A stretch of 63,652 nucleotides of DNA, filler included, from Bigelowiella natans CCMP2755 (lineage: Eukaryota; Protista; Cercozoa), in the NCBI GenBank assembly GCA_000320545.1. It is 5 parts of 5 records of this genome, joined end to end, with 100 filler letters (N's around TTAATTAATTAA, not from the genome) between each part and the next. Parts side by side here need not be neighbours in the genome. Positions count along the whole stretch, not along the records: positions 1 to 28,304 come from ADNK01001803.1; 4 more parts are not named here. The stretch is one strand, 5' to 3'. Made by a program: the position numbers and the translations under genes. Positions 4,896-22,972 of this stretch are shown piece by piece (position 1 is the first letter of the stretch; each line of letters opens with the position of its first letter). The notes below the pieces were generated by a model. The model was not told where the DNA came from. It searched no databases and was given only the letters and a program-made list of their open reading frames with translations.

Positions 4896-7800
4896 ATGGC
4901 GGTCGCTGCAGAGCATTATAGCGGGGCGAAGGGAATCGTTAATCTCTCATTGATTGCATCATCTGCGATTCTCTTCTTCATAGAAGTCACTGTGCTACTG
5001 TCGAGACGAAGAATTAAGGTAGGTCATGGGCATGCAGGATTTAGGACTTTAGATGTTCGCGAAGCACATACGCACATATAGTCGTTCTACATTCGTCTAA
5101 TCGCTAAGCTGTGTTCATGGTAAAATTAATTTTGTCATTTCTTTTTTTAATTGCATGATCAGCCAAGTCCACAAATTGGAGTTCAAGTAGGTGTGACGAT
5201 TACAACAGCATTTTCAGTGGCACTGTTCGTATGGATGGACATAGGAATTGCATGGAGACCATGGATTATACTCTCTACCCTCACAACTGTGGTGCTCTAT
5301 GGAACAATTGCGACCTTTGGTAAGCGGCCAGTGCATTGTGCTTCGTTTCTACTAGATGAAAAATATTGACACACCTGTAAAAAAAAGAGAAGAAATACCT
5401 GAATTAGAAATTTACACGTTGACAGTATTCGTACTATTGTTTTCCTGTCGAAAGAATAAAACTATAAATGTACCAAACTCTGCTTCTATATTTTCTTTTG
5501 ACTCCTCTTAATGCGATTTTCCAGTTCAGACGATTTGCGTGGTGACAATGCCAATTATTAGCTCATAGCTGCTTTCATTCCATCACATCCCTTAGTTATG
5601 TCCTTAGTCAACGGTGTTGTAAAAAATCCTTTCGGCAAAAAGTGAGTCTCATTTTTTATGCAATGTCACCATCTTCTGCTTTATTATTTTTTAAATTCAA
5701 TGCCCCTTATCACCTTATCACCAATATCAATTTGCTTGGATATGCATTTTCGGATCTCAGATATCATCGTCATGAGTTTAGGATTTACCAAGACAGGCTT
5801 ATATTTGTACCTATCTTCCTTTATGCAACAGTCCAAGCTGTGCTTGTGGTGCTTGCTCTTGTGTACGACCAAAGCCTCTTCGTCGAATTGGTAAGTAGAT
5901 CATACCTGCTAATCCACCATCAACTCTTCATTTACACGAACGGTACTAAACTTCCTTAATTACTTTTCTTTAGCTTATTTAGTCTTCTCTTTTTCTTCAA
6001 CCAATAGTTTATCATTGCCATGATCAGATATTGCTTTGCCACGGTGCCATGCTCCTCTGTCTTACAATTGGTAATCTTCTCCGAAATTCTTTATTTCTTT
6101 GGTCTTGCATGTCATTAGATTTGTGATTGTTGAATATTGTCTAACTATATGTGTTTTAACTCTTTGATTTCAAATCACGGTGACAACATATTATTCCCGC
6201 CTTACATTAGTTGCTTCCCGAGTTCTCTATATAATCCGTATAATGGTTAAAGATGGAATCAAATCGCAGAAGGTATAAGACATACGTTTGTAATCTTTGA
6301 ATCTCATCTTCCGCTCGCTTAAGTAGCCACTTGAATTACTATCGCTATATAGTCATTTCTCTCTGGGAAAATGGGCGGTAGTAGCAACCGTCGCTGCGGC
6401 GACAGCAAATATAAAAGTAGCAAGAACACTACTCCAAATAATAACCAAGATAGAAATAGAAATAATATTTCATTCTTCGGTTATTGTTCTTCTACTCCTC
6501 GTAAGGGAGTAGCATTCGAGGTGAAGAAGGAAAATGTGAGCACCGAAAATGGCGACAAGGCTGCCGAGAACGACAAGAACCGGAAAAACCGCAAGGATAC
6601 TACTGCCCTCGCAGAACCATCTTCCGACATAAAAACCATTTCTAATGATGATGTCACACTACCTTCGGGTCATCCATATCGGGATTTCCAACATACAAAA
6701 GAGAGGGAATGGAAGCACCGGGATTCCAAACTAAAATCCGCTCATGCTTATCCCGTAGATACTGGAAGATGTAATGAAGCAAGAGCGTTTTCCTCTCAAA
6801 AAGAGATGACAACACCAGGACAAAATGCAATATCTTCCAAAGCATCAGTTGCAGCCTCCCAACACCGAGTATTAATTAAACCGCACCAAATCGGGACTAC
6901 AAAAATTGAAATAAAGGAATCAATGTTGGTAGCTACGACTTGTCAAGTAGCGGAAACAATTGTTACAGCTTCTATCACGAGGAAAAAAAGGACAGATTGT
7001 CAAGGTCCAAGTGGAGAGTCATCTAAATTAGATACATCATGTTCTAATGTCGCCGTTCGAAATGATGAACTAGACAATACTCTAACTGATAGAAAGCCAC
7101 CATTGTTGGAACAAACGTCAGTAATAACAGTACTTCAGACTACAGAAAATTGCAGCGATAGACCAATGGATTATAACGAAAATATAATCTTTCAAAAAGA
7201 TATTAAGAAAGAAAATTCGTCAGTGAATCAAACCCTGAACTGCGTTAGTCATGCCAGTACGAGGAACAATGAGAATGAAAATGGTAGGAAACGCCAACCT
7301 CCTCCTGGTTCGACAACGGGAACTAGTAGTTTTCAGTTGCCCGATGCAACTCTTCCCCCTGGGAAAGTCACTCAAGAAGATACTTCTATTTCTGCATGGA
7401 GAGAAGGGGGTATCTCGAACAGGAATCACTGTAACAGCATCAGTAATACTATTAGCTCTCCTCCAAGGATCATTGGAATTCAATCTGATCCCCCTCCCGC
7501 GCAAACTAATGCTAATGCCCCAAGGAAGCTCCAACTGCTAGAAGAAGACGAAACTGCCTTTCCCTTAACTTCTAATTCCTGCCATCAAAGCAGCTCCCGT
7601 GAAAAAGCGTGCCCTGACAATAATGGTGCTGATCAGACTGATCATAATGTGGGGAAAGATTGCCATACTAAAGGACAACGACAGCGACACTTTTCATTTG
7701 TAAAGCCGTGCACTAAAAATGGTGCTCCTGAGGAGGAAAAAAAAATAGCAGCTATCACAGAGAATAAAATTTTCACGAAGATGAAAGACAGTGAGAGACG

Positions 7801-10015
7801 TAGAGGGAGGGGAATGTCCTCACCAAATAGACAGACCCGAACTATAAACATGGCTGATAGCAGACTTCGTGCGTCATCGTATCGGGGTGGTGGCAGTGGG
7901 ATCGAAGCGAGTGGTTATGGTAGTAGCCGTTTTTCGCGTTATGTGAACAGACGAACGTCACATTGTTATAGCAGCAGAAGAGAGCGTGAAGCAAGAAATT
8001 TGCGACATGGGCAGCAACTGAAAGATGTCTCTACAAAGGTGATCGTGATGAATATTGTGAGGTTGTTTGAACAATATTTCAACTGCTTAAGCTTTTTATC
8101 CATTTAAATTTGAATGATGACATCTTCTCTTACAAGCAGTCGTGATTTGTAAATTGAGTTTGTCATTGTAATAACAGCTATGTAGGCTAATGTGGGGAAC
8201 CCTTTTTCTCGGAACTGTATTCTCAGGTTGCATTACTTGACTACAATCACATTATTGATTTAGACATGTTTACTGTTGTATCCTGCAGACTGCAGACTGC
8301 TCCTTATTAGTGTGATATTTTAGTAATATACATATGTTTGTTATAGATAATTTAATGATCCTAACTTTACTTACTCGACTTTGTAGCTGCGATGATATCC
8401 ATCGCTTGCTTGATGCTGTCGAAACTAGAAAGTAATGGGACCGAGTCTCGATTTAGCCAAAGCTTTCGAAACAACCAAGTAACTAAGAAGCTTTATAAGC
8501 ACATAAGCACAGAGTAAAAGCATACATAACAGTTCAATTTCTGATTTCAGGAGGACAATGACTATCCTCTCCAGCGGCTTCGCATTGAATTGTTCATGTT
8601 TCCATTCGTATCGGCAATATTGATGTACTATGCATGGGCTCCGGGGTCTACCATTATTTCGTCTTCAGTGTGTGGTCGTAGATGCTGGAATTCTCTCATC
8701 GGCGGTTGTCCATGGCTTTGGAAAAGGGGGAAGGATGCAGGAGATACAAAAAGCAGTCGCCGATGTTCCGCTGCATCTAGGTGTTGCATTGTCGCATTTA
8801 CTCTACCAAATTATTCATATAAGATGTATACCCAGTTGTTGTATTTTCGGTCTAATGTCCTCAAAGGATTTGTTTTGGCACGTAAACTCCAAGACTACAT
8901 TTCCTGCATAGAATACCCATATACATTGGTTCTTCATCATTTTTCAAACTACTTTACACACTCTAAAAATCACAGATGCAATTCGCAACACATCTTATTG
9001 ACATGTTGAACGATTGTGAATGCTCAGGGCAGCAATTGCTTCATCCCTACGAAGGACTAGGGAGGGTAGTGAATTTGCTAGACATTATGAAACCAAAATC
9101 GGTTTCGTTTCGAAAAATCCCCAGTTCGGATCGCAATTTGTGCATCAACATCGTCGGAACACATTTTTGGATAACGGAAAAGGCAACGCTATAGTTTCAC
9201 CATCTACACCAGCCGGTTTTGTCCCTACTGGAGGAATCAAATCCCCATTTCATAGGAAGCAGACCACCTCTAAACCCCCCTTACAATTGCCATTTGCCAG
9301 CTCTGTGAGAAAATTAGCCAGCACTACAACTTCGTACCCAAGCCACAATGATGTTATAAGTGAAAAAAAATCAGAAAATGTAGCAGCACTGGGCGAAAAT
9401 AGGGGAACAGAGAAGGCAGAAATCCGGGACATAGATCCCTCTATCAACGGAAACACCTCGAGGAGAAAGTCTTCCGCTCTGTTCTCAAATTCTGTAATTC
9501 CTCCTGGGAAAAAAGGAAGGATTCGATGCAGTAGTTCATCATCGATAACTATGTCCACTAGCTTTCCACCACCTCTCGTCAGACGCACAAGTAGCTCTAC
9601 TAACATTTATAATCATGGGTCATGTACTCGACTCACTAATACTTCTGGTGCCAACCTTTGTAGTTCTACAATTGCATCTGCAGATAATCACTCAACAACG
9701 GAAATATCTTCCAATGTTCGAGATGATCCAATTGCTTTGTCTGTAACCCGAGATTCTACGCACTGTTTACCTTCAAATCATCGAAATAGTGACAGCAACA
9801 ATGGAAATTTTGTTAACAATAAGCCGTCGCTTAAATTGCACTGTCTTCGTTCTTCCTCTTCTCTGCAGTGTAAATCATCACCATACTCCGATCATATGTC
9901 TCCACCGTCACCAAATTTACAGCCAATGTCTTCTGGCAACATGGAATCGAATGCCAGTCTTTTTCATTTTGCAGCGATCAGCAATACCACAAGTAAATCA
10001 GGTGATTCAAAATGA
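4896..10015 (+). CDS. Hypothetical multi-pass membrane protein with long Ser/Thr/Asn-rich disordered regions, multi-exon
   Basis: Hydrophobic exons at about 4896-5020, 5160-5318 and 5750-5890. Exon 6211-6273 (ASRVLYIIRIMVKDGIKSQK) splices in phase to 6353, which runs into the 578-aa ORF. Further exons lie at about 8550-9060, then terminal exon 9124-10015. Start and some internal junctions are uncertain. Confidence 0.6.
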
Positions 10016-14187: not shown

Positions 14188-14890
14188 AGCAGTAGTGTAG
14201 GGACGACGAGACACCGACTAAAAAACCATGCTTCTACATGTCTACCTGATGTGTGCAGCCGTGCTGTGCTGTAACTAGTTTGTAGAAAAGGGGCTGTTAC
14301 AAATAATCGATTAATCTTGCTTTCACATACCGTCCACATCTATATTGGCAAGTGCCGTTGTTTACTTTCATTTTCTGTTGCGCAAGCTCTGCTGAATAAG
14401 CGTGCATGTGGTCGAAGATAATTTAAATTGACTATAACGACGAGCGACAGATGGCGAGCAGTTGGCTGCGCGCGCACTCTAGCACCATACCACGCTACAT
14501 GTGCATGTAGTGCGACGATCGATGTGCGCATCTTGTGGCATGCATGCAAAAAATATTGGCACCCCATCGTGCATGCATATGCTATGCTAGCACTGGAGCA
14601 TGCTCATAGTGCTGGATGATTAAAGCTAGAACACTACGATGCTTCGGCAACAACGTGTGTATGCGTTTGCATAATTCTCATACTAAGCGATTCGGATCTC
14701 AATAATATAAAAACATGCAATGGCGTGCAATACGAAACGGTCAAAGCGACGATGTTATTGAATAATTACAATGCATATATGCTCTTGGCGCAGGATTGGA
14801 TATCCTTTTACCGTTCTCTCATCATCGACCATTTCTAATAAAACGTCGATCGAGGGTGAGATGGCGATGATCTTTCACTTTGCTATTCTC

Positions 14891-17800
14891 CTAAGCATCA
14901 GCATGCACGAATTCGTCGTTGTTGACGAGGGTGTTGAAGTAGCGGCGGGTAGAGAGCTTCCTTCCAAGGGCGCGGTTGACCTTGTTCTCGAGGCCAGCTT
15001 GCAGCATCAGGTTCATATGTCTCTTCAGCTTAGGGAAATCGTGCGCATCAGGCTCCCTAGAAGATACGAGGAAGATGCGGTCGTCAGGAAGGCCGGTGTT
15101 GGCTCGGAGGTCCTCACGAATAACTTGCTTCGTCTCCTCAGGCGACAAGCCCATGTCCCACTCCGCGTTCTCTATCTCCAAGTCGATCTTGGTCCGCACA
15201 GCGAAGAAGGGCACGTTGTTGCGCGTCATCTCCTTCATCAACGTCAGGTCCGTTTCGGTGTAGCGCCCGGCTGCGATGACGATCACCAGGTCGAAGTACT
15301 TGATGCTGGAGAACAAAACAACGGCAACACACACACACACACACGCATCGCAGTTTTTATCAGCTATCACAGGAACATTGCCGTGTGCATGCAGCAGAGC
15401 GCGCGCACCAGCGCACGCCACATGCATCGTCAGAGGGGGAGGAATCAATAACAGCCGCACTTACCCCATCACGCGTAAGTAGGAGTTGAGAGGGAACTTT
15501 GGCGTTCCTGCACCGGGAAGGTCCCACAGTCGGAAGTGCTCTTGCCCGCTGCACGCAATGCCGTCGTCCTCCATTAGCTGGCAAGCTGCGTCTGTGAAGG
15601 TGTACGGGGTTGCAACCATCGTAGTCTCGACGTTTCCGACATTCGCGGCGCCGGCGTCATGGGAGTCGATCCCACGCATAGCGTTCATGAAAGAGCTCTT
15701 TCCGGTTCCTAAGGGCGTTCGTAGGGGGGGGGGGGTGAGAGAGTGGGCGGCGGCGTCCACCGTTAGGCCATTATGAAAATTGGCACGGAGAGAAGAGAGC
15801 ACACACTCACTCAAGAGTCACGCGAGCTTCGTTGTCTCGATCTCACCAATCTCACTTCGATACGACTAATTTCAGAATCCTCTTCTCTCCCCGCCCCGCC
15901 CCCCCCCGCCCGCTGATCGAGCGAATATCAAATACTGCGAATGTTGATAAAAGGAATTGATCCATCGCACTAAGCCCACACGCTGCTAATTTGTTGTTGT
16001 CATTGTTGGTTGAAGCGTTGTTATCGATGATATCTATATTACCTGAGCAACCACTGATAGCCAAGTTGCCCGTGCCTTTGTACCCAGCTTCTCGCATCCA
16101 TTGAGGCATGGGGTAAGCCAAAACCTGAAAGAGAGAGGGAGAGAAGAGAGATTGCGTTGGTTGAAGTGTGAGCGTGAGGAAGGTGTAACGCTCAATGTGA
16201 CATTTTAACTCCCCTCGGGTATGTTTACGCGCACAACGATTTCCTGCTGTATATGTGAGTCGCTAGCTGCACGCGCACCTCTCCGCCAGCCAAGTCAGCC
16301 GAATCTCCCCTGCATTCTTCGTCGAGCTTGGTGATGGGGAACAGGGTCATATCGACAGTGTCCATGCCTGTCATCGAGTACACACACAACGCACACAGTC
16401 GTAATCGTAAGGGGGGGCGAGAGGGTGCGAGAGAGAGAGAGAGAGAAGCGAGCGAGCGGATGCGAGAGACAGGGCACAGAAGTAAAAGCGTTCCAGTGGT
16501 GTTGAATATGCCAAAACGAATTTCATTTCACGGAAGCTCTTTCTCCCCCCCCCCCCCCCTGATCTCTCCCTGTCTACTTCGTACCGCCAACGAAGTGTTC
16601 TCGGGCCACCTGTCGCATCTGGCGAGGCTCTGGATCTCCGATGTAGCCGAAGGAGCAGTTGATGCAGACGATATCAGACGACTGTGTGCGCGATGCAACC
16701 TCCTACGGAGAGCAGCAGCCAGGGAAAGGACCAGGAAGGAGGACATTGTTAGGACATTGTTACATATTCATTGTTAGTATATTGTTACATATTCCATCCC
16801 TCACACTTCAGTATCATTATTATTATTATTATTAATAATAATAGTAGTAATAGTAGTAGTATTAGTAGTAGTAGTAGTAGTAGTAGTAGTACCTTGAGGA
16901 ACTCAATGCGGTTGGGGGCATTGACGTCTGCCCCATAAACGAAGAGTCGCTTAGCAGCTCCGAAATCAACAGGCTCCCCGATCCGCGCAACCACCCAGTT
17001 GGGGCCTAGATTGATGTTTTCCTGGTCGAAGGGCACACTAGGGTCCAGGAGGAGAGCGTTCACTTCACCAGTCTTTTCACCGTACTCCTTCAGAATCTGC
17101 ATACGCATGTACAGGTCGGAGAACGTCCACCACGGCATCGGGTCAAGCTCGAAGGCCGTGGCGAGCAGCCTTGGGCCGTTGACTTGCTCGGTGAGAATAG
17201 TGCGAAGAGAGTCTGTCGCTGAGGTCACAGCGTTAGCAACCTAAAGGTTTGATGAAAAAGGAAAGACGATGGTAAGAGTGCGTTTTAAGGGTAGAGCTGA
17301 AGGGAGGGAGGAGGAATAATAATAATAACAATAATTCTATATGAGAATCGTCACTACGTTCGCTTGCCCTCTATTTACGGAGAAATTACGTGGATTGTGA
17401 ATGCACAATACGGCATCATGTGTTTAATATATATGTACATACATCGGTAGGCAGTCCTCGATGATCACGGGTGACGATGTCGTCCCAAAATCCAGCGTCG
17501 CTGTGGCTAAATTCTTCCACTCCATTTCTGGAGTCAATGACGGAAGCTGCACGGTCCCTGATCCAGTAATCCGACTGGCTATTAATGGCAATGTTACGTC
17601 TACTGAGCTTATTGCACAGTGCAGCAGCGCCTTGGCGGAAGCCGATGCGGGGCAAGAACGTACGAGCAGCCTGATGAGTATGTAACACAATTTTCATCAT
17701 TAAATTTTTAATATTCTCCAGTCATTGCGTGGCATTAGGGTTTAGGGGGGAACAAACAATAAACGCTTCTAAATAATCTATTTTAAATGAACAACCGATC

Positions 17801-17903
17801 TCTGCGCAATTGGTGCGGACAGCGTCGACGAACTGCGCGATACGAAGACGGCAACCATTGCCAAGAGGCCCAGGCCAGCCATGAATAAAAACGACGATTT
17901 CAT
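14891..17903 (-). CDS. Immunity-related GTPase (IRG/p47/IIGP-like) with N-terminal signal peptide plus transit-like peptide, 8 exons
   Basis: All seven introns are GT-AG and phase-consistent by hand. First three exons are 17903-17796, 17670-17443 and 17240-about 16893. G1 ISGCSG|TGKSSFMNAMRG, G2 region VGNVETTM, G3 WDLPGAGT, YFDLVIVIAAGRY, G4 FFAVRTKID, G5 IFLVSS...DFPKL. These are IRG hallmarks of the GKS type. Confidence 0.9.
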
Positions 17904-19646
17904 ACTGGTCTTACTACTGCGACTCTGTCTGCTGACTTGGAATTGGTGACAATACAGGAGGCATATAACAAGCAATAAAACTAAGTCAAACGCTGGAGGA
18001 ATAAGCACATCTTCTTTCGAAAATCAGCCCTCGTTACAAAGAGCTATGCCTGCTTTCAGAAGAGCTAATGGAAGCTGAAAGGCCCCGGTGCACGTCTGGC
18101 TAACATCTCAACTAGAACCCCCCAAAAATAGCTCTACCACTACTTCTAACTGCTCTGACGGCAGACTACTGCCACGAAACTACAGTCCCACCCCTTCGCG
18201 CCAACCTGTTCGCGAGCTTTGTATTTTTCTGTCACGTCGATTGCGGCGATTTACAGGGTCCAGACTACAAACATTCTAGATTCGCGTCTGAATCCCATGC
18301 GTTTTTGTTACTTTTAGTTAAGCAAATAAGAGATTTCTTCTATGGCGACCTTTATAACCCATTAGGTTGTAATCGTATGACGAAAGGAGTAAATGGATTT
18401 TAATCTATGAATTTAAGGATAAATACCGGGATTAAAATACGTAATTTTTGCCCTGGAGCAACCCTATGCGATGGAGTCGTACCCCATCGAATATTTAAGA
18501 CTCATAAAATATTCTACATCTGCATAATCGCAAGTAAATTTCAAATATATTTTATCAGAATATGACTATTTATATAGTCTTTCGTCTCATATTAACACCC
18601 TCAGCAGGATCAATGGTCAAACATCCACTCTAAATAAATGTTGTTAGATATATTTCGAAAGGAAGGAAATTGCAAATCGTTTCAACTGCAACATATTTTT
18701 AATAAAAATCGACAATATTCTCTGTCTCCCGTATGATATGCATCTGTGAAATTAGTTAAGAGTTGGGCCGTTAAAACTGTGTCTGTTACAGCCGAAGAGG
18801 AAATGTACCGGTTCGCTAAATGAGAAAATGCATGGCGTTTATCTAGATCTATGGAATTCTTCTTTTAATCAGCCAACCGATGTTCCGAACAGCGAAGATC
18901 GTGATTCGGAGCCAACGAAAAAAAAATGCGCGAAAGGATTTTCTTTGTTGCATCAGAGGAACTTGTGATGCCAAAGGGCTGCAGAAAGAAGAATTTAACC
19001 TTACGACAATTATAAATATTTGACGTAAGTAAAACTTACCTGTGCATATTGTTAAACCCTGACTTTTTATACTCGCCCTCTGGTATGATTGCTTCTCGAC
19101 GACGTTCGGAATATTATGGTGGTTGGCTTCTCTCATGCAACCCCTAACTTCCGAGGTTGAACCGATTTTGAAGGCACATTCAGTGTAAGGTTGGGAGCTA
19201 AAAGATTTTGTAGCCAACTGACTTCCGTATTTATTCTCTTCCGTGACAATATACTGCTAAACCCGCTGTCATATGAACCTCGATCATTCACCCGTTACGT
19301 CCATGATTGAAGCAGGATAATGAGGACAAGAACTCGAAGCGCCGGCATTAAGCCAGTGGTATCCATTCAACGTCATAAGGTTAGTCCCCATTTGGTTGGG
19401 AGGTTCATCGGTTCTATGAGAGAGAGCGAAACTATACATCACACACGTCACCGTACCTAATCTGCAAGCTTAATGCAAAAAGAGGGATGCTTACGTCCTG
19501 ACGTACATAAACCGTTTGGGGAATTGAGGTGGGCGGGGAATTTGATTATTTGCTAATAAATGCTCTTACAGCCTCTCCATGCTTCCTCTGCAAGAAACCC
19601 ATCGCTACCAATACCTGAGCGTGGGGAAAATTCGAAGAGCGCAGCC

Positions 19647-21135
19647 ATGGTTAGGAGAAACAAAGTTTTGGCTGAGGCGGTGAGGGGAAAGCTCAATCGA
19701 CCTCAAGTGCGAAAGCCTAGAAGGAATCAAAAGCCTGGTGTAATGAAGACGGGGGGAGGAAGCAACGCTCTGGTTTTAGCAAAGGATAGGAAGGTTGGCT
19801 ACTATCATTCCACTACCTAGTATCCCCACACTGCCTTTTATCCACTGATTGTTACCATTTGATTCTTTTAAAAAATGGATTTTCATAGACCGCATTGACT
19901 ATCAGCGAAGCGATCGAGAGAGCGTATCGAACGTAAGAAAATAACATGTGCAGTTGAGATAGATCTCATCAAAAGGATGTTGCATATCATCGTTGGCTTC
20001 ACAGAGAATTTAGACTTGCCGACATTATCCAGGAAGCGAAACTTAGCGAATCGAAACCATCTTCTAGAAGCAAAGGTAATATTAAATATGGCCATGAGCT
20101 CACTAGTTCGTGATGAAATGTGTCAAAGCAATTGAATAACCGCATTTGCAATATCTTCACGGAATCTCTTCCTCCCCCATCCTCTCCTCACACCGTCAAG
20201 ATTCGACGAGCACGGGGGCAGGCGTCTAAGCTACTTCACTCAAACTCCAAAGCTTCTTCTAAGTCCGAGAAAAAAAAACCTAGGAAAAGAACGCAAGGAC
20301 GCGCATGGAACCCTGCCATGACCAAAGGCCCCATCGTAACTACCGGTGGTGGTGGGAGCTTTCGTGTTGAGAAGCGATCAATTGCACAGCCAAACGATGA
20401 TGGAGGCAGTGCTTTTGGCGACGATGGCAAGGCGACGAAAGGGACGAAAAATCAAGCACAGCAACCTGAGCCAAACCCCCCCCCACGCCCCTCGCATTTA
20501 CAGGTTGTGGGATTTCCTGTACTTTGCAATGCATTCGAAAATGGCTACACGTGTTGATCAGAGCATTGCTGTGTCGCCTGTACTAGCACTGAAAGTGAGA
20601 CACATTATTTGCCGTATTGATCCCCCCCCCAAGAAATTCAATCGGTATTTATGAATTGATGTTGTGCGAGTCCCGCGACACCATTGATTATGCCTCGGGA
20701 TGGGTACCACCCGTGGGTTTTGTTTGATTTCATTTAAATATTCTTCGATATCGCACACCATCCGCACAACTATATATGAACGAATATCCCTAATTCAGCC
20801 CCCCGGCATCGACGAGGGGAGAAAAGAAGGCGACGGCGGTCGAGGCGATATGACGCGGAGGGGGGGAAGCCGTTCCTCTAGTCGCAAGGTTTCAATCTCC
20901 TCGCGTGACGAAAACACCGGCTTTGTCGCCGACAGGGGCAGCAACAGCAAGAAGCAAAACAAGCTCTACGGCAGCATGTCTCAGCCTAGTGCGGCGGACC
21001 CTGCCTCTGTGCCCCAATTCGAGTCCAAAGCAGCAGCCATAGCTGCAGCAGCAGCAGCATTATCATCAAAGCAACCTCAAGGAGATTCACGTCTTGCCGG
21101 CCCACACTCGTCCAAACTCCAGCCTACTACTACTG

Positions 21136-21168
<33 letters not shown>

Positions 21169-22972
21169 TTAAGGCGACAAGAACGACACCTGGAGGGCAG
21201 GGACTGGCAAGTGGTGACCCTGTATTGCGACGGATCGCTCACAAAATCGCATATCCTTCTCCCAGCCCCCAGCAGCCGCCACAATCATCATCATCGTCTA
21301 ACAGTGCTGCAGTGAGCAAAACGGCAACGGCGGCTGCTGCGAAGCAGAAGAACACCAAACGGCGAAAGAGCAGCAGCGCCTATTCAACATCATCACATCA
21401 GCCGCTCGCCCCCCCCCCAACCCGGGAGCAACTATCGTCATCTGATACGCGTGCGATGAGAGCGCGAAAGCTTATGTTCCCCAATCCAGAGGGGAAGAGT
21501 AAGGACGGCGGCGAAAAGAGTAAGCATCCTATCGAAGCAGTCGAAGAAGAAAGAAAGAAGGCTCTGGAGGAGATGAGGCAATGGGAACGGCGACGGCAAG
21601 AAGGTTTTCTCTAGATTCGATGTCACTTACAATACTGAATATGTATTCTCTCGCCCCCCCCCCCCCCCCCCCCCTTACACAAATTGTTAGCATACATCCC
21701 CAGTACATATAGCCCTCTAGTGCACGATCAGCAGCAAGCATTACAACAAATATCCTTTCTTCTCCTACCTGCAGCACTACCCCCTCCGGAAACACCCCTC
21801 CGGAACGCGAGCCCTTTGCCTCCCCGCGACAACAGGGCCAACCGGAAAGCAGTCGCCCCCGACTACGAGGAGGACCCGTACTTCTCGGCGCACCTTGACT
21901 CCCCGGAGCGAGTCTCCGCCGCGCTCACAACGCACGAGATCGACACGCTGAAACAGCTGTTGAACCGGAAACTCCCAGAGCTGGATGGCCGCTATCGAGG
22001 CGCGCTGAAGCGGATAGGCCCAGGAGGAGGGAGGGGCGGCACCGCTGATTACACGTCTCCGCTGGGCGTGCTTGCCGCGGCGCGGGAAGATTTCCGTCAT
22101 TCGGCTTCGCTCCTAAATCCCAGCTTCGACTACCATACGCTGCATAAAGATCATTTCTCGCTCTTGCAGACCCTGGGCTCGCTTACCCCCTCCCCTCTCC
22201 AGTCGATCCTCAGCGCGAAAGGGAGGGGGCTGGATCCTTCCGCGGCGGTGGCGGCGGCAATTAGCGGCCAGGGAGAAGCTGCTGCTTCAGGGCGGGGTAG
22301 GTTCTCCCTCAATGAGCCTGTTGTTCTTGTTGGGCTGTCGAGCAAGGCGCCAGCATTTGATGGAAGGGTTGGGCGTGTGCGAGGTCCTCCCGGCCCAAGT
22401 GGGAGAATCCCGGTAGTAAATGCACCCCAACGGACGGAAACTGCTTTTTTCTCCTCCTCCTCCTCCTCCTCCTCCTCCTCCTTGCTCTGCTTCTTTTTCT
22501 TCTTCTCTTTCTTCTTGTTCTTGCTCCCCTTCCACGTTTGGCTTGTTGTTCTTGTCTTTCTTTCTCCTTGTCGTTCCTCGTCTCGATCTTCGTCGGAAAC
22601 TGTGCGTAGTAGAGTAGTAATAGTAGTAGTAGTAGTAGTAGTAGCAGCAGTACCAATAGCTTGCAAGGGGCCTGTTATCGTGTGTTAACTGATAGCCCAT
22701 TTGCAGGTGTTCTTGGCGGCGGCGGATGAGCACAACGACGATGACGACTACAGCAGTGCGACTGATAGTGGGGGGGGAGGTAAAGCAGGCCGAGGAGGGA
22801 ACACGGTGTACGTGAAACCTGAGAACTTGGCGAAACCGCACACTCTTAACGCGCTGCAAGGCGCGGGGGCAGCTGCCACTGATAGCATATCGAAGCTGGT
22901 AATCTTAGCGATGCAACCCAGCTTTTTCCTTGCCAGCTCAGCAAATTTCATCCGCACGCCAATCCCACGCTG

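What the first reader, a model, noticed from the sequence alone, without database searches (positions are those of the whole stretch)
14891..17903. IRG/p47 immunity-type GTPase apparently targeted to the secondary plastid
Seen: the spliced N-terminus MKSSFLFMAGLGLLAMVAVFVSRSSSTLSAPIAQRS|AARTFLPRIGFRQGAAALCNKLSRRNIAINSQS has a hydrophobic signal, then an S/R/A-rich stretch with no Asp/Glu in the first 69 residues. It is joined in phase to a full GKS-type IRG domain. Established: vertebrate IRGs are cytosolic dynamin-superfamily-related GTPases that load onto and rupture pathogen vacuoles, and chlorarachniophyte plastid or periplastid proteins use signal + transit-like leaders. Inference: an IRG-like membrane remodeller acting on or within the endosymbiont-derived compartment. 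I know of no such reported case.
Basis: partly seen in the sequence, partly recalled or inferred. Interest (0 to 1): 0.8.

Follow-up and report, generated by a model that had tools for sequence, protein, structure and literature searches.

The report
Plastid-targeted IRG-like GTPase, already described
This is a real, expressed Bigelowiella natans gene (JGI protein 89051) for a GTPase with an immunity-type (IRG) G domain behind a plastid-targeting leader, but the protein was already found in the plastid proteome in 2012 and its family was localised to the pyrenoid matrix of a sister alga in 2024.

Summary
An 8-exon minus-strand gene (17903 to 14891, 543 aa, all introns GT..AG) is confirmed intron by intron by transcript contigs from three studies. 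It encodes a hydrophobic N-terminal signal, a basic stretch with no Asp/Glu up to residue 69, and a C-terminal IIGP/IRG-type G domain (Pfam PF05049, E 1.5e-38).

- Only the G domain is IRG-like. The IRG helical domains are absent.

The protein is identical to JGI Bigna1 89051. Hopkins et al. 2012 detected 89051 in isolated plastid-nucleomorph complexes and noted its bipartite leader and GTPase-like C-terminal half. Moromizato et al. 2024 (PNAS) described the same family in Amorphochlora amoebiformis (PPAP3/6/8): signal plus transit peptide, unknown N-region, IRG-like G domain. They showed pyrenoid-matrix localisation, measured GTPase activity for PPAP8, and found orthologues across chlorarachniophytes.

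In my tree this gene groups with an A. amoebiformis orthologue (support 100) inside a monophyletic chlorarachniophyte family. Plastid targeting is therefore supported. The "membrane remodeller" idea and the claim of no prior report are not. Verdict: real but already known, so low interest for the scan.

The parts
14735..18289 (-). Transcribed region of the gene (mRNA). The 5' end lies about 18220-18289 and the poly(A) site at about 14735.
   Evidence: RNA contigs cover 14750-18220/18238, a cluster of molecule ends lies at 18289, and poly-T loose ends lie before 14734/14735.
17904..18220 (-). 5' UTR of at least 317 nt with short upstream ORFs, all of which end before the main ATG. An in-frame stop lies upstream of the ATG at 17903.
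   Evidence: X2 contig 9 runs unspliced 17795-18220; sequence reading.
17796..17903 (-). Exon 1 (residues 1-36): signal-peptide-like h-region FMAGLGLLAMVAVFV (residues 7-21) and the start of the transit-like stretch.
   Evidence: maximum Kyte-Doolittle 2.53 over 15 residues; joint 17670|17796.
17572..17670 (-). Exon 2, first part (residues 37-69): the rest of the transit-peptide-like stretch. Residues 22-69 hold 8 K+R, 19 S/T/A and no D/E.
   Evidence: Sequence conservation with orthologues begins only at SDYW (residues 69-72).
16330..17493 (-). Family-specific N-domain (residues about 96-280, exons 2-5, introns included). It is an alpha/beta fold with the conserved DPMPWW motif.
   Evidence: Alignment A2. 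AlphaFold pLDDT is above 90 over residues 100-280. Outside the family there were no sequence relatives among 1.84 billion representatives.
15014..16067 (-). IIGP/IRG-type G domain (residues 317-503, exons 6-8, introns included).
   Evidence: Pfam PF05049 E 1.5e-38. PDB Irgb6/Irga6 E about 5e-23. The top 38 Foldseek hits are all IRG structures.
15695..15708 (-). Second part of the G1 P-loop GCSGTGKS (residues 322-329). The first part lies at 16043-16052, so the motif is split by intron 6.
   Evidence: invariant columns G322 G325 G327 K328 S329.
15512..15523 (-). G3 motif DLPG (residues 387-390).
   Evidence: invariant.
15182..15193 (-). G4 motif TKID (residues 444-447).
   Evidence: K445 and D447 are nearly invariant.
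14891..15013 (-). Short C-terminal tail (residues 504-543, the end of helix 496-519 plus one strand) and the stop codon. It stands in place of the roughly 160-residue IRG C-terminal helical domain.
14735..14890 (-). 3' UTR, about 156 nt.

Best explanation
The gene is Bigelowiella natans nuclear gene Bigna1 89051. It belongs to the chlorarachniophyte-specific 'unique GTPase' family, whose A. amoebiformis members are PPAP3, PPAP6, PPAP8 and PPAP93.

How it most likely works: the preprotein enters the ER through its signal peptide, and the acid-free, basic transit-peptide-like part (to about residue 69) carries it across the inner plastid membranes. The presequence is then removed. The mature protein of about 475 residues has two parts. 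One is a family-specific alpha/beta N-domain, which in the homologues is needed for pyrenoid localisation. The other is an IRG-type G domain that hydrolyses GTP. It most likely resides in the plastid stroma, concentrated in the pyrenoid matrix.

Shown here: the gene model, expression and splicing; the domain make-up; identity with 89051; orthology with an A. amoebiformis family member.
Shown by others: 89051 is present in the plastid-nucleomorph fraction; homologues localise to the pyrenoid matrix; PPAP8 has GTPase activity.
Inferred: the import route, the cleavage near residue 69, the pyrenoid location in B. natans, and any nucleotide-dependent self-association like that of IRGs.
For: Gene model and all introns confirmed by RNA contigs. 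The model is identical to P0072 = jgi/Bigna1/89051. Hopkins 2012: IDs 89051 and 237242 were found in the plastid-nucleomorph proteome, both with predicted bipartite leaders and GTPase-like C-terminal halves (prediction methods). Moromizato 2024: SP plus TP, uncharacterised N-region and IRG-like G domain; PPAP3/6/8 in the pyrenoid matrix by GFP, and PPAP3 and PPAP8 also by immunogold; PPAP8 has GTPase activity; orthologues in nine species. Pfam IIGP E 1.5e-38. Structural matches to IRG crystal structures. Tree: the family is monophyletic (SH-aLRT 96) and this gene groups with A. amoebiformis AAMO2058_000503200 (100). Leaders of the same character but unrelated sequence occur in most of the full-length family members examined, and conservation starts at SDYW. 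The paralogue on C225 also has upstream exons that encode a signal plus basic stretch. The leader is predicted disordered.
Against: No localisation experiment exists for the B. natans protein itself. The 2012 proteome could not separate stroma from the periplastidal compartment (PPC). I could not tell which of PPAP3/6/8/93 is the orthologue of this gene, because the supplements are not held; PPAP93 was only a low-rank proteome hit and its localisation is not reported in the text I could read. The family also exists in pyrenoid-less Partenskyella, so its role need not be pyrenoid-specific. No SignalP or ChloroP was available here; my leader analysis is heuristic and otherwise relies on the published predictions. 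The 5' UTR carries short uORFs, which is unusual but does not move the main start.
Confidence: 0.85

Rival explanations
1. The protein stops in the periplastidal compartment (the remnant endosymbiont cytoplasm around the nucleomorph) instead of crossing into the stroma or pyrenoid.
For: Hopkins 2012 explicitly left plastid versus PPC open for 89051. PPC proteins of chlorarachniophytes also use signal plus transit-like leaders. In A. amoebiformis the PPC penetrates the pyrenoid.
Against: Three of the four A. amoebiformis paralogues were localised to the pyrenoid matrix by GFP, two of them also by immunogold, and not to the PPC. The leader is long, strongly basic and acid-free like those of its paralogues.
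Confidence: 0.1
2. One reading: an IRG-like membrane remodeller that loads onto and deforms endosymbiont-derived membranes.
For: The G domain is truly IRG-type. IRGs and their dynamin-like relatives act on membranes (my knowledge of the vertebrate family). The inner plastid membranes and the PPC invaginate into chlorarachniophyte pyrenoids.
Against: The N-terminal and C-terminal helical domains of IRGs are absent: the Pfam match stops at profile position 213 of 375, and only about 40 residues follow the G domain. No amphipathic or transmembrane segment is evident after the leader. The homologues are matrix proteins by immunogold.
Confidence: 0.04
3. The hydrophobic N-terminus is an uncleaved signal anchor or an ordinary secretory signal, and the protein works in the ER or secretory pathway.
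For: A hydrophobic N-terminus alone cannot distinguish these fates.
Against: The protein was recovered in the plastid-nucleomorph fraction. A 48-residue basic, acid-free stretch follows the h-region (P about 1.6e-5). The same two-part design recurs across the family with unrelated sequence. Homologues were localised experimentally to the plastid.
Confidence: 0.02

Closest known systems
Amorphochlora amoebiformis 'unique GTPases' PPAP3, PPAP6, PPAP8 (and PPAP93), Moromizato et al. 2024, PNAS 121:e2318542121 (PMC10927497)
   Same: Same three-part design: signal plus transit peptide, an N-region without known relatives, and a C-terminal IRG-like G domain. Same monophyletic family. A direct A. amoebiformis orthologue (AAMO2058_000503200, P0076) is about 70% identical over the mature part.
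   Different: Different species. No localisation or enzymology exists for the B. natans protein. Which PPAP number is the orthologue could not be established. The paper calls the N-regions 'diverse'; my alignment shows a common alpha/beta domain with a DPMPWW motif in all four clades.
Vertebrate immunity-related GTPases (IRG/p47; Irga6/IIGP1, Irgb6/Tgtp2, Irgb10, IRGC), Pfam PF05049
   Same: G domain: GKS-type P-loop, DxxG, TKxD. About 30% identity over some 185 residues, phmmer E about 5e-23. The best structural matches are all IRG crystal structures.
   Different: No IRG helical domains. An unrelated alpha/beta N-domain instead. An organelle presequence. A 15-residue insert between switch I and G3. 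A plastid location instead of cytosol or pathogen vacuole. No link to interferon.
IRG-type G-domain proteins of dinoflagellates (Symbiodiniaceae 'IRGC'/'Iigp1', Alexandrium)
   Same: Nearest non-chlorarachniophyte relatives of the G domain, 40-44% identity. They fall on the same side of a well-supported split (97) away from the animal and bacterial sequences.
   Different: The alignments cover the G domain only. They show no similarity to the N-domain or the leader.

Membership tests
IRG / p47 GTPases (Pfam IIGP, PF05049) | G domain scores above the family's curated cut-off | tested here: met
   133.3 bits against a cut-off of 24, E 1.5e-38, residues 317-503.
IRG / p47 GTPases (Pfam IIGP, PF05049) | GKS-type P-loop (GxxxxGKS) with DxxG and TKxD motifs | tested here: met
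   GCSGTGKS 322-329, DLPG 387-390, TKID 444-447. These are invariant or nearly so across 52 relatives.
IRG / p47 GTPases (Pfam IIGP, PF05049) | G-domain fold closest to solved IRG structures | tested here: met
   The top 38 Foldseek hits are all Irga6, Irgb6, Irgb10 or GM4951, E down to 8e-14.
IRG / p47 GTPases (Pfam IIGP, PF05049) | N-terminal helices plus the roughly 160-residue C-terminal helical domain flanking the G domain | tested here: not met
   The Pfam match covers profile positions 37-213 of 375 only. PDB alignments cover Irga6 70-244 of 413. Only one helix and one strand follow the G domain.
IRG / p47 GTPases (Pfam IIGP, PF05049) | Interferon-induced, cytosolic, loads onto pathogen vacuoles | not testable with these tools
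   The organism is an alga. The published location of the homologues is the pyrenoid matrix.
Chlorarachniophyte 'unique' pyrenoid GTPases (PPAP3/6/8 family) | Groups inside the chlorarachniophyte clade together with A. amoebiformis members | tested here: met
   Family is one side of a branch with SH-aLRT 96. The subclade with AAMO2058_000503200 has support 100 (quick LG+G4 tree).
Chlorarachniophyte 'unique' pyrenoid GTPases (PPAP3/6/8 family) | Signal peptide plus transit peptide at the N-terminus | tested here: met
   Hydrophobic core at residues 7-21, then 48 acid-free residues with 8 K+R. These are heuristics only; a bipartite leader for 89051 was predicted with SignalP, ChloroP and other tools by Hopkins 2012.
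Chlorarachniophyte 'unique' pyrenoid GTPases (PPAP3/6/8 family) | Uncharacterised N-region before a C-terminal IRG-like G domain | tested here: met
   Alignment A2; no Pfam family; no outside relatives.
Chlorarachniophyte 'unique' pyrenoid GTPases (PPAP3/6/8 family) | Pyrenoid-matrix localisation | not testable with these tools
   Published for A. amoebiformis PPAP3/6/8 only. For 89051 only the plastid-nucleomorph fraction is known.
Chlorarachniophyte 'unique' pyrenoid GTPases (PPAP3/6/8 family) | GTP hydrolysis | not testable with these tools
   Measured for recombinant PPAP8. The motifs are intact here.

The most novel reading that the evidence does not exclude
The conserved N-domain (residues about 96-280, DPMPWW motif) has a P-loop-NTPase/RecA-like alpha/beta topology but no Walker A motif. 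It may be a degenerate nucleotide-binding (pseudo-NTPase) module that pairs with the IRG-type G domain within one chain. In that reading it would regulate nucleotide-dependent assembly in the pyrenoid and double as the pyrenoid-targeting element. This point is not made in the 2024 paper, which treats the N-regions as diverse and unknown.
Probability: 0.12. Interest if true: 0.5.

Novelty: already known. Interest (0 to 1): 0.22.

Why it matters
An immunity-type GTPase domain working inside a secondary plastid is a striking reuse of a fold known from vertebrate cell-autonomous defence. These GTPases are among the ten most abundant proteins of the A. amoebiformis pyrenoid proteome, yet their function there is unknown. 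That story has already been published, so for this scan the value is confirmation.
- the exact RNA-supported gene model;
- the link between JGI protein 89051 and the PPAP family;
- the observation that all four paralogue clades share one confidently folded alpha/beta N-domain.

Tried and rejected
- Exon 3 of the N-domain gave nothing useful against PDB sequences (best E 0.44) or in the ESM Atlas feature search.
- phmmer of exon 3 against 1.84 billion representatives gave one true hit (P0001, an A. amoebiformis orthologue). The other three hits were long tandem-repeat proteins, which I reject as repeat artefacts.
- N-domain model: Foldseek against PDB had no hit at E <= 0.001. VIA-align gave only RecA/helicase-like matches at Z 8.5 or below, within the range the tool calls common arrangement.
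- The top Atlas row was DUF1995 (TM 0.52/0.60). No family member hits PF09353, or any other Pfam family consistently, at E <= 1, so I do not claim it.
- The idea that the N-domain is a duplicated G domain is not supported: hhalign probability 0.3%.
- Supplements of both key papers and of the diurnal-expression paper are not held, and Hirakawa 2009 is not held. I therefore could not map PPAP numbers or ID 237242 to sequences, nor quote the stroma-versus-PPC rules.
- Neighbouring long ORFs in the window have no Pfam family.

Full report
**1. The observation**

Reading the minus strand of 14800-18100 and assembling exons by GT..AG boundaries gives an 8-exon coding sequence:
- 17903-17796
- 17670-17443
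- 17240-16893
- 16702-16585
- 16367-16279
- 16124-16043
- 15708-15465
- 15305-14891 (stop codon included)

It totals 1632 nt and encodes 543 aa. A hydrophobic core FMAGLGLLAMVAVFV (residues 7-21, mean Kyte-Doolittle 2.53) is followed by 48 residues with 8 Lys/Arg, 19 Ser/Thr/Ala and no Asp/Glu. The rest of the protein holds 14.8% Asp+Glu, so an acid-free run of 69 residues has a chance probability of about 1.6e-5.

**2. Expression and splicing**

The stretch 14400-18500 was laid against four public runs. Contigs from three different studies (X1, X2, X3) show six introns as listed joints at my positions. The seventh (16702|16893) lies in a microsatellite that the tool skips, but it follows from the coordinates of X2 contig 9.

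That same contig continues unspliced from 17795 to 18220. The ATG at 17903 therefore sits behind a 5' UTR of at least 317 nt. The reading frame is closed upstream by a stop, and there is no in-frame ATG between that stop and 17903. Raw 3'-biased RNA reads (X21) end in poly(A) at about 14735.

The UTR contains several short upstream ORFs, each ending before the main ATG. Low-depth contigs spanning intron 6, and database proteins that stop at residue 406 (P0008, ending RVMG and then a stop inside intron 7), point to a minor unspliced fraction.

**3. What the protein is**

- Pfam places residues 317-503 in IIGP (PF05049): 133 bits, E 1.5e-38. Only profile positions 37-213 of 375 are covered.
- Against PDB sequences the best matches are mouse Irgb6 (residues 60-236 of 417), Irga6 (70-244 of 413) and Irgb10, at E about 5e-23 to 4e-21.
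- An AlphaFold model built on a 52-sequence alignment (mean pLDDT 78.7, pTM 0.70) was searched with Foldseek. The top 38 hits are all IRG crystal structures.
- The G1 (GCSGTGKS), G3 (DLPG) and G4 (TKID) motifs are intact, and they are invariant or nearly so across relatives. The P-loop is of the GKS type.
- After the G domain only one helix and one strand remain. The IRG helical domains are absent, so this is an IRG-type G domain and not a full IRG.

**4. The overlooked middle part**

Residues 20-93 are predicted disordered, as expected of a presequence and linker. Residues about 100-280 fold with pLDDT above 90 into an alpha/beta domain.

The domain is conserved in all family members (alignment A2: 19 sequences, invariant MP within a DPMPWW motif, mean column identity 38%). 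It has no Pfam family. phmmer of its largest exon against 1.84 billion cluster representatives found only a family member plus three repeat artefacts.

Structure searches give only generic RecA/helicase-like P-loop-NTPase topology (Z 8.5 or below; no Foldseek hit at E <= 0.001). A DUF1995 resemblance in the Atlas (TM 0.52/0.60) is not backed by sequence. A profile comparison with the G domain is not significant (probability 0.3%).

In the genome the domain occurs only next to an IRG-type G domain: on C1934 (this gene), C225 and C2833, plus fragments on C990-C992.

**5. Identity and literature**

The spliced model is identical to P0072, which is jgi/Bigna1/89051 of Bigelowiella natans. The genome size of 91.4 Mb fits, from memory, the published B. 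natans assembly.

Hopkins et al. 2012 (PMC3542566) analysed isolated plastid-nucleomorph complexes by mass spectrometry. [quoted passage not shown] Both resemble GTPases in their C-terminal half, and plastid versus PPC location was left open (prediction methods).

Moromizato et al. 2024 (PMC10927497) describe 'unique GTPases' PPAP3, PPAP6 and PPAP8 of Amorphochlora amoebiformis. These carry a signal peptide plus transit peptide, an N-region with no known relatives, and a C-terminal G domain similar to immunity-related GTPases. All three localise to the pyrenoid matrix by GFP, and PPAP3 and PPAP8 also by immunogold. Recombinant PPAP8 hydrolyses GTP. Deletions implicate the N-region in pyrenoid localisation. 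A fourth paralogue, PPAP93, is in the proteome. Orthologues exist in nine chlorarachniophyte species, including pyrenoid-less Partenskyella.

**6. Tying this gene to that family**

A word-index search with the A. amoebiformis orthologue returned chlorarachniophyte proteins from Lotharella, Gymnochlora, Partenskyella, Amorphochlora and Bigelowiella longifila. These align over both the N-domain and the G domain. Fish, bivalve, dinoflagellate and bacterial proteins align over the G domain only.

A quick maximum-likelihood tree of the G domain (LG+G4, SH-aLRT support) makes the 19 chlorarachniophyte sequences one group (96) with four subclades. This gene sits with B. longifila (98% identical over the G-domain columns), L. 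oceanica and A. amoebiformis AAMO2058_000503200 (support 100). B. natans 91951 and 132569 fall in two other subclades, each with an A. amoebiformis partner. A. amoebiformis has four members, matching the four PPAPs. Dinoflagellate proteins are the nearest outsiders.

I could not assign PPAP numbers to sequences because the supplements are not held.

**7. The leader as a targeting signal**

Most full-length family members examined have the same two-part N-terminus, a hydrophobic core followed by a basic, acid-poor stretch, but with unrelated sequence. Within this gene's clade, alignable conservation starts only at SDYW (residues 69-72 here). That is the usual signature of a cleaved presequence.

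The JGI model of paralogue 91951 starts at an internal Met. On C225, however, an upstream exon (L006:354-476), together with a 5' extension of the next exon, encodes MRSSGYVGTLAMLALSATSALLFF... followed by a basic stretch, in phase with the annotated start. This matches the leaders of its orthologues.

SignalP and ChloroP were not available here. The formal prediction for 89051 is the one published by Hopkins et al.

**8. Mechanism and rivals**

- Best explanation (0.85): a nucleus-encoded GTPase imported through the ER and the inner plastid membranes, then processed near residue 69. It acts in the stroma, most probably concentrated in the pyrenoid matrix by its N-domain, and cycles GTP on an IRG-type G domain. 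What it does there is unknown even in the published system.
- PPC residence (0.10) cannot be excluded for the B. natans protein.
It also conflicts with the matrix location of the homologues.
- An ordinary secretory or ER fate (0.02) conflicts with the proteome and with the transit-like stretch.

**9. Verdict**

Novelty: already known.

Noticed in passing
L006:354-476 and L006:660-716 (G000:C225, about 15034-15396): The JGI model of paralogue Bigna1 91951 (P0075) starts at an internal Met (MRACATEEF...). An upstream exon plus a 5' extension of the next exon encode a signal-like segment and a basic stretch in phase, as in its orthologues. The annotated model is probably N-terminally truncated.
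   Followed up: partly
G000 contigs C990, C991, C992 (e.g. C992:2388-2516, C990:20-151): Fragments on three small contigs are 55-79% identical to the fourth family clade (Partenskyella P0011 type). This suggests a fourth B. natans paralogue broken up in the assembly. It may be the second proteome ID, 237242.
   Followed up: partly
window 17904-18290 (- strand): The long 5' UTR (at least 317 nt) holds several short upstream ORFs of 7-16 codons, each ending before the main ATG. This could mean translational control.
   Followed up: no
window 15466-15464/intron 7 and 15709-16042/intron 6: Low-depth RNA contigs (about 1% of exon depth) run through intron 6. Database proteins P0008 and P0073 end at residue 406 with a stop just inside intron 7. 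Together these indicate a minor intron-retaining transcript fraction.
   Followed up: partly
window 16836-16891, 15317-15352, 16411-16460, 15725-15737, 16541-16556: The introns carry microsatellites and homopolymer tracts: (TAG)n / TAATAGTAGTAG x4.7 in intron 3, (CA)n in intron 7, (GA)n and poly-G/C runs in introns 4 to 6.
   Followed up: no
window 6371-8107 (+), 9020-10015 (+), 20700-22688 (+): Long open frames elsewhere in the piece (578, 331, 304 and 334 aa) have no Pfam family at E <= 0.001. They were not examined further.
   Followed up: partly
window 14771-15451 (+): A 226-aa open frame lies antisense to exon 8 and intron 7. Stranded 3'-end reads are almost all from the other strand, so it is most likely a shadow frame.
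   Followed up: partly
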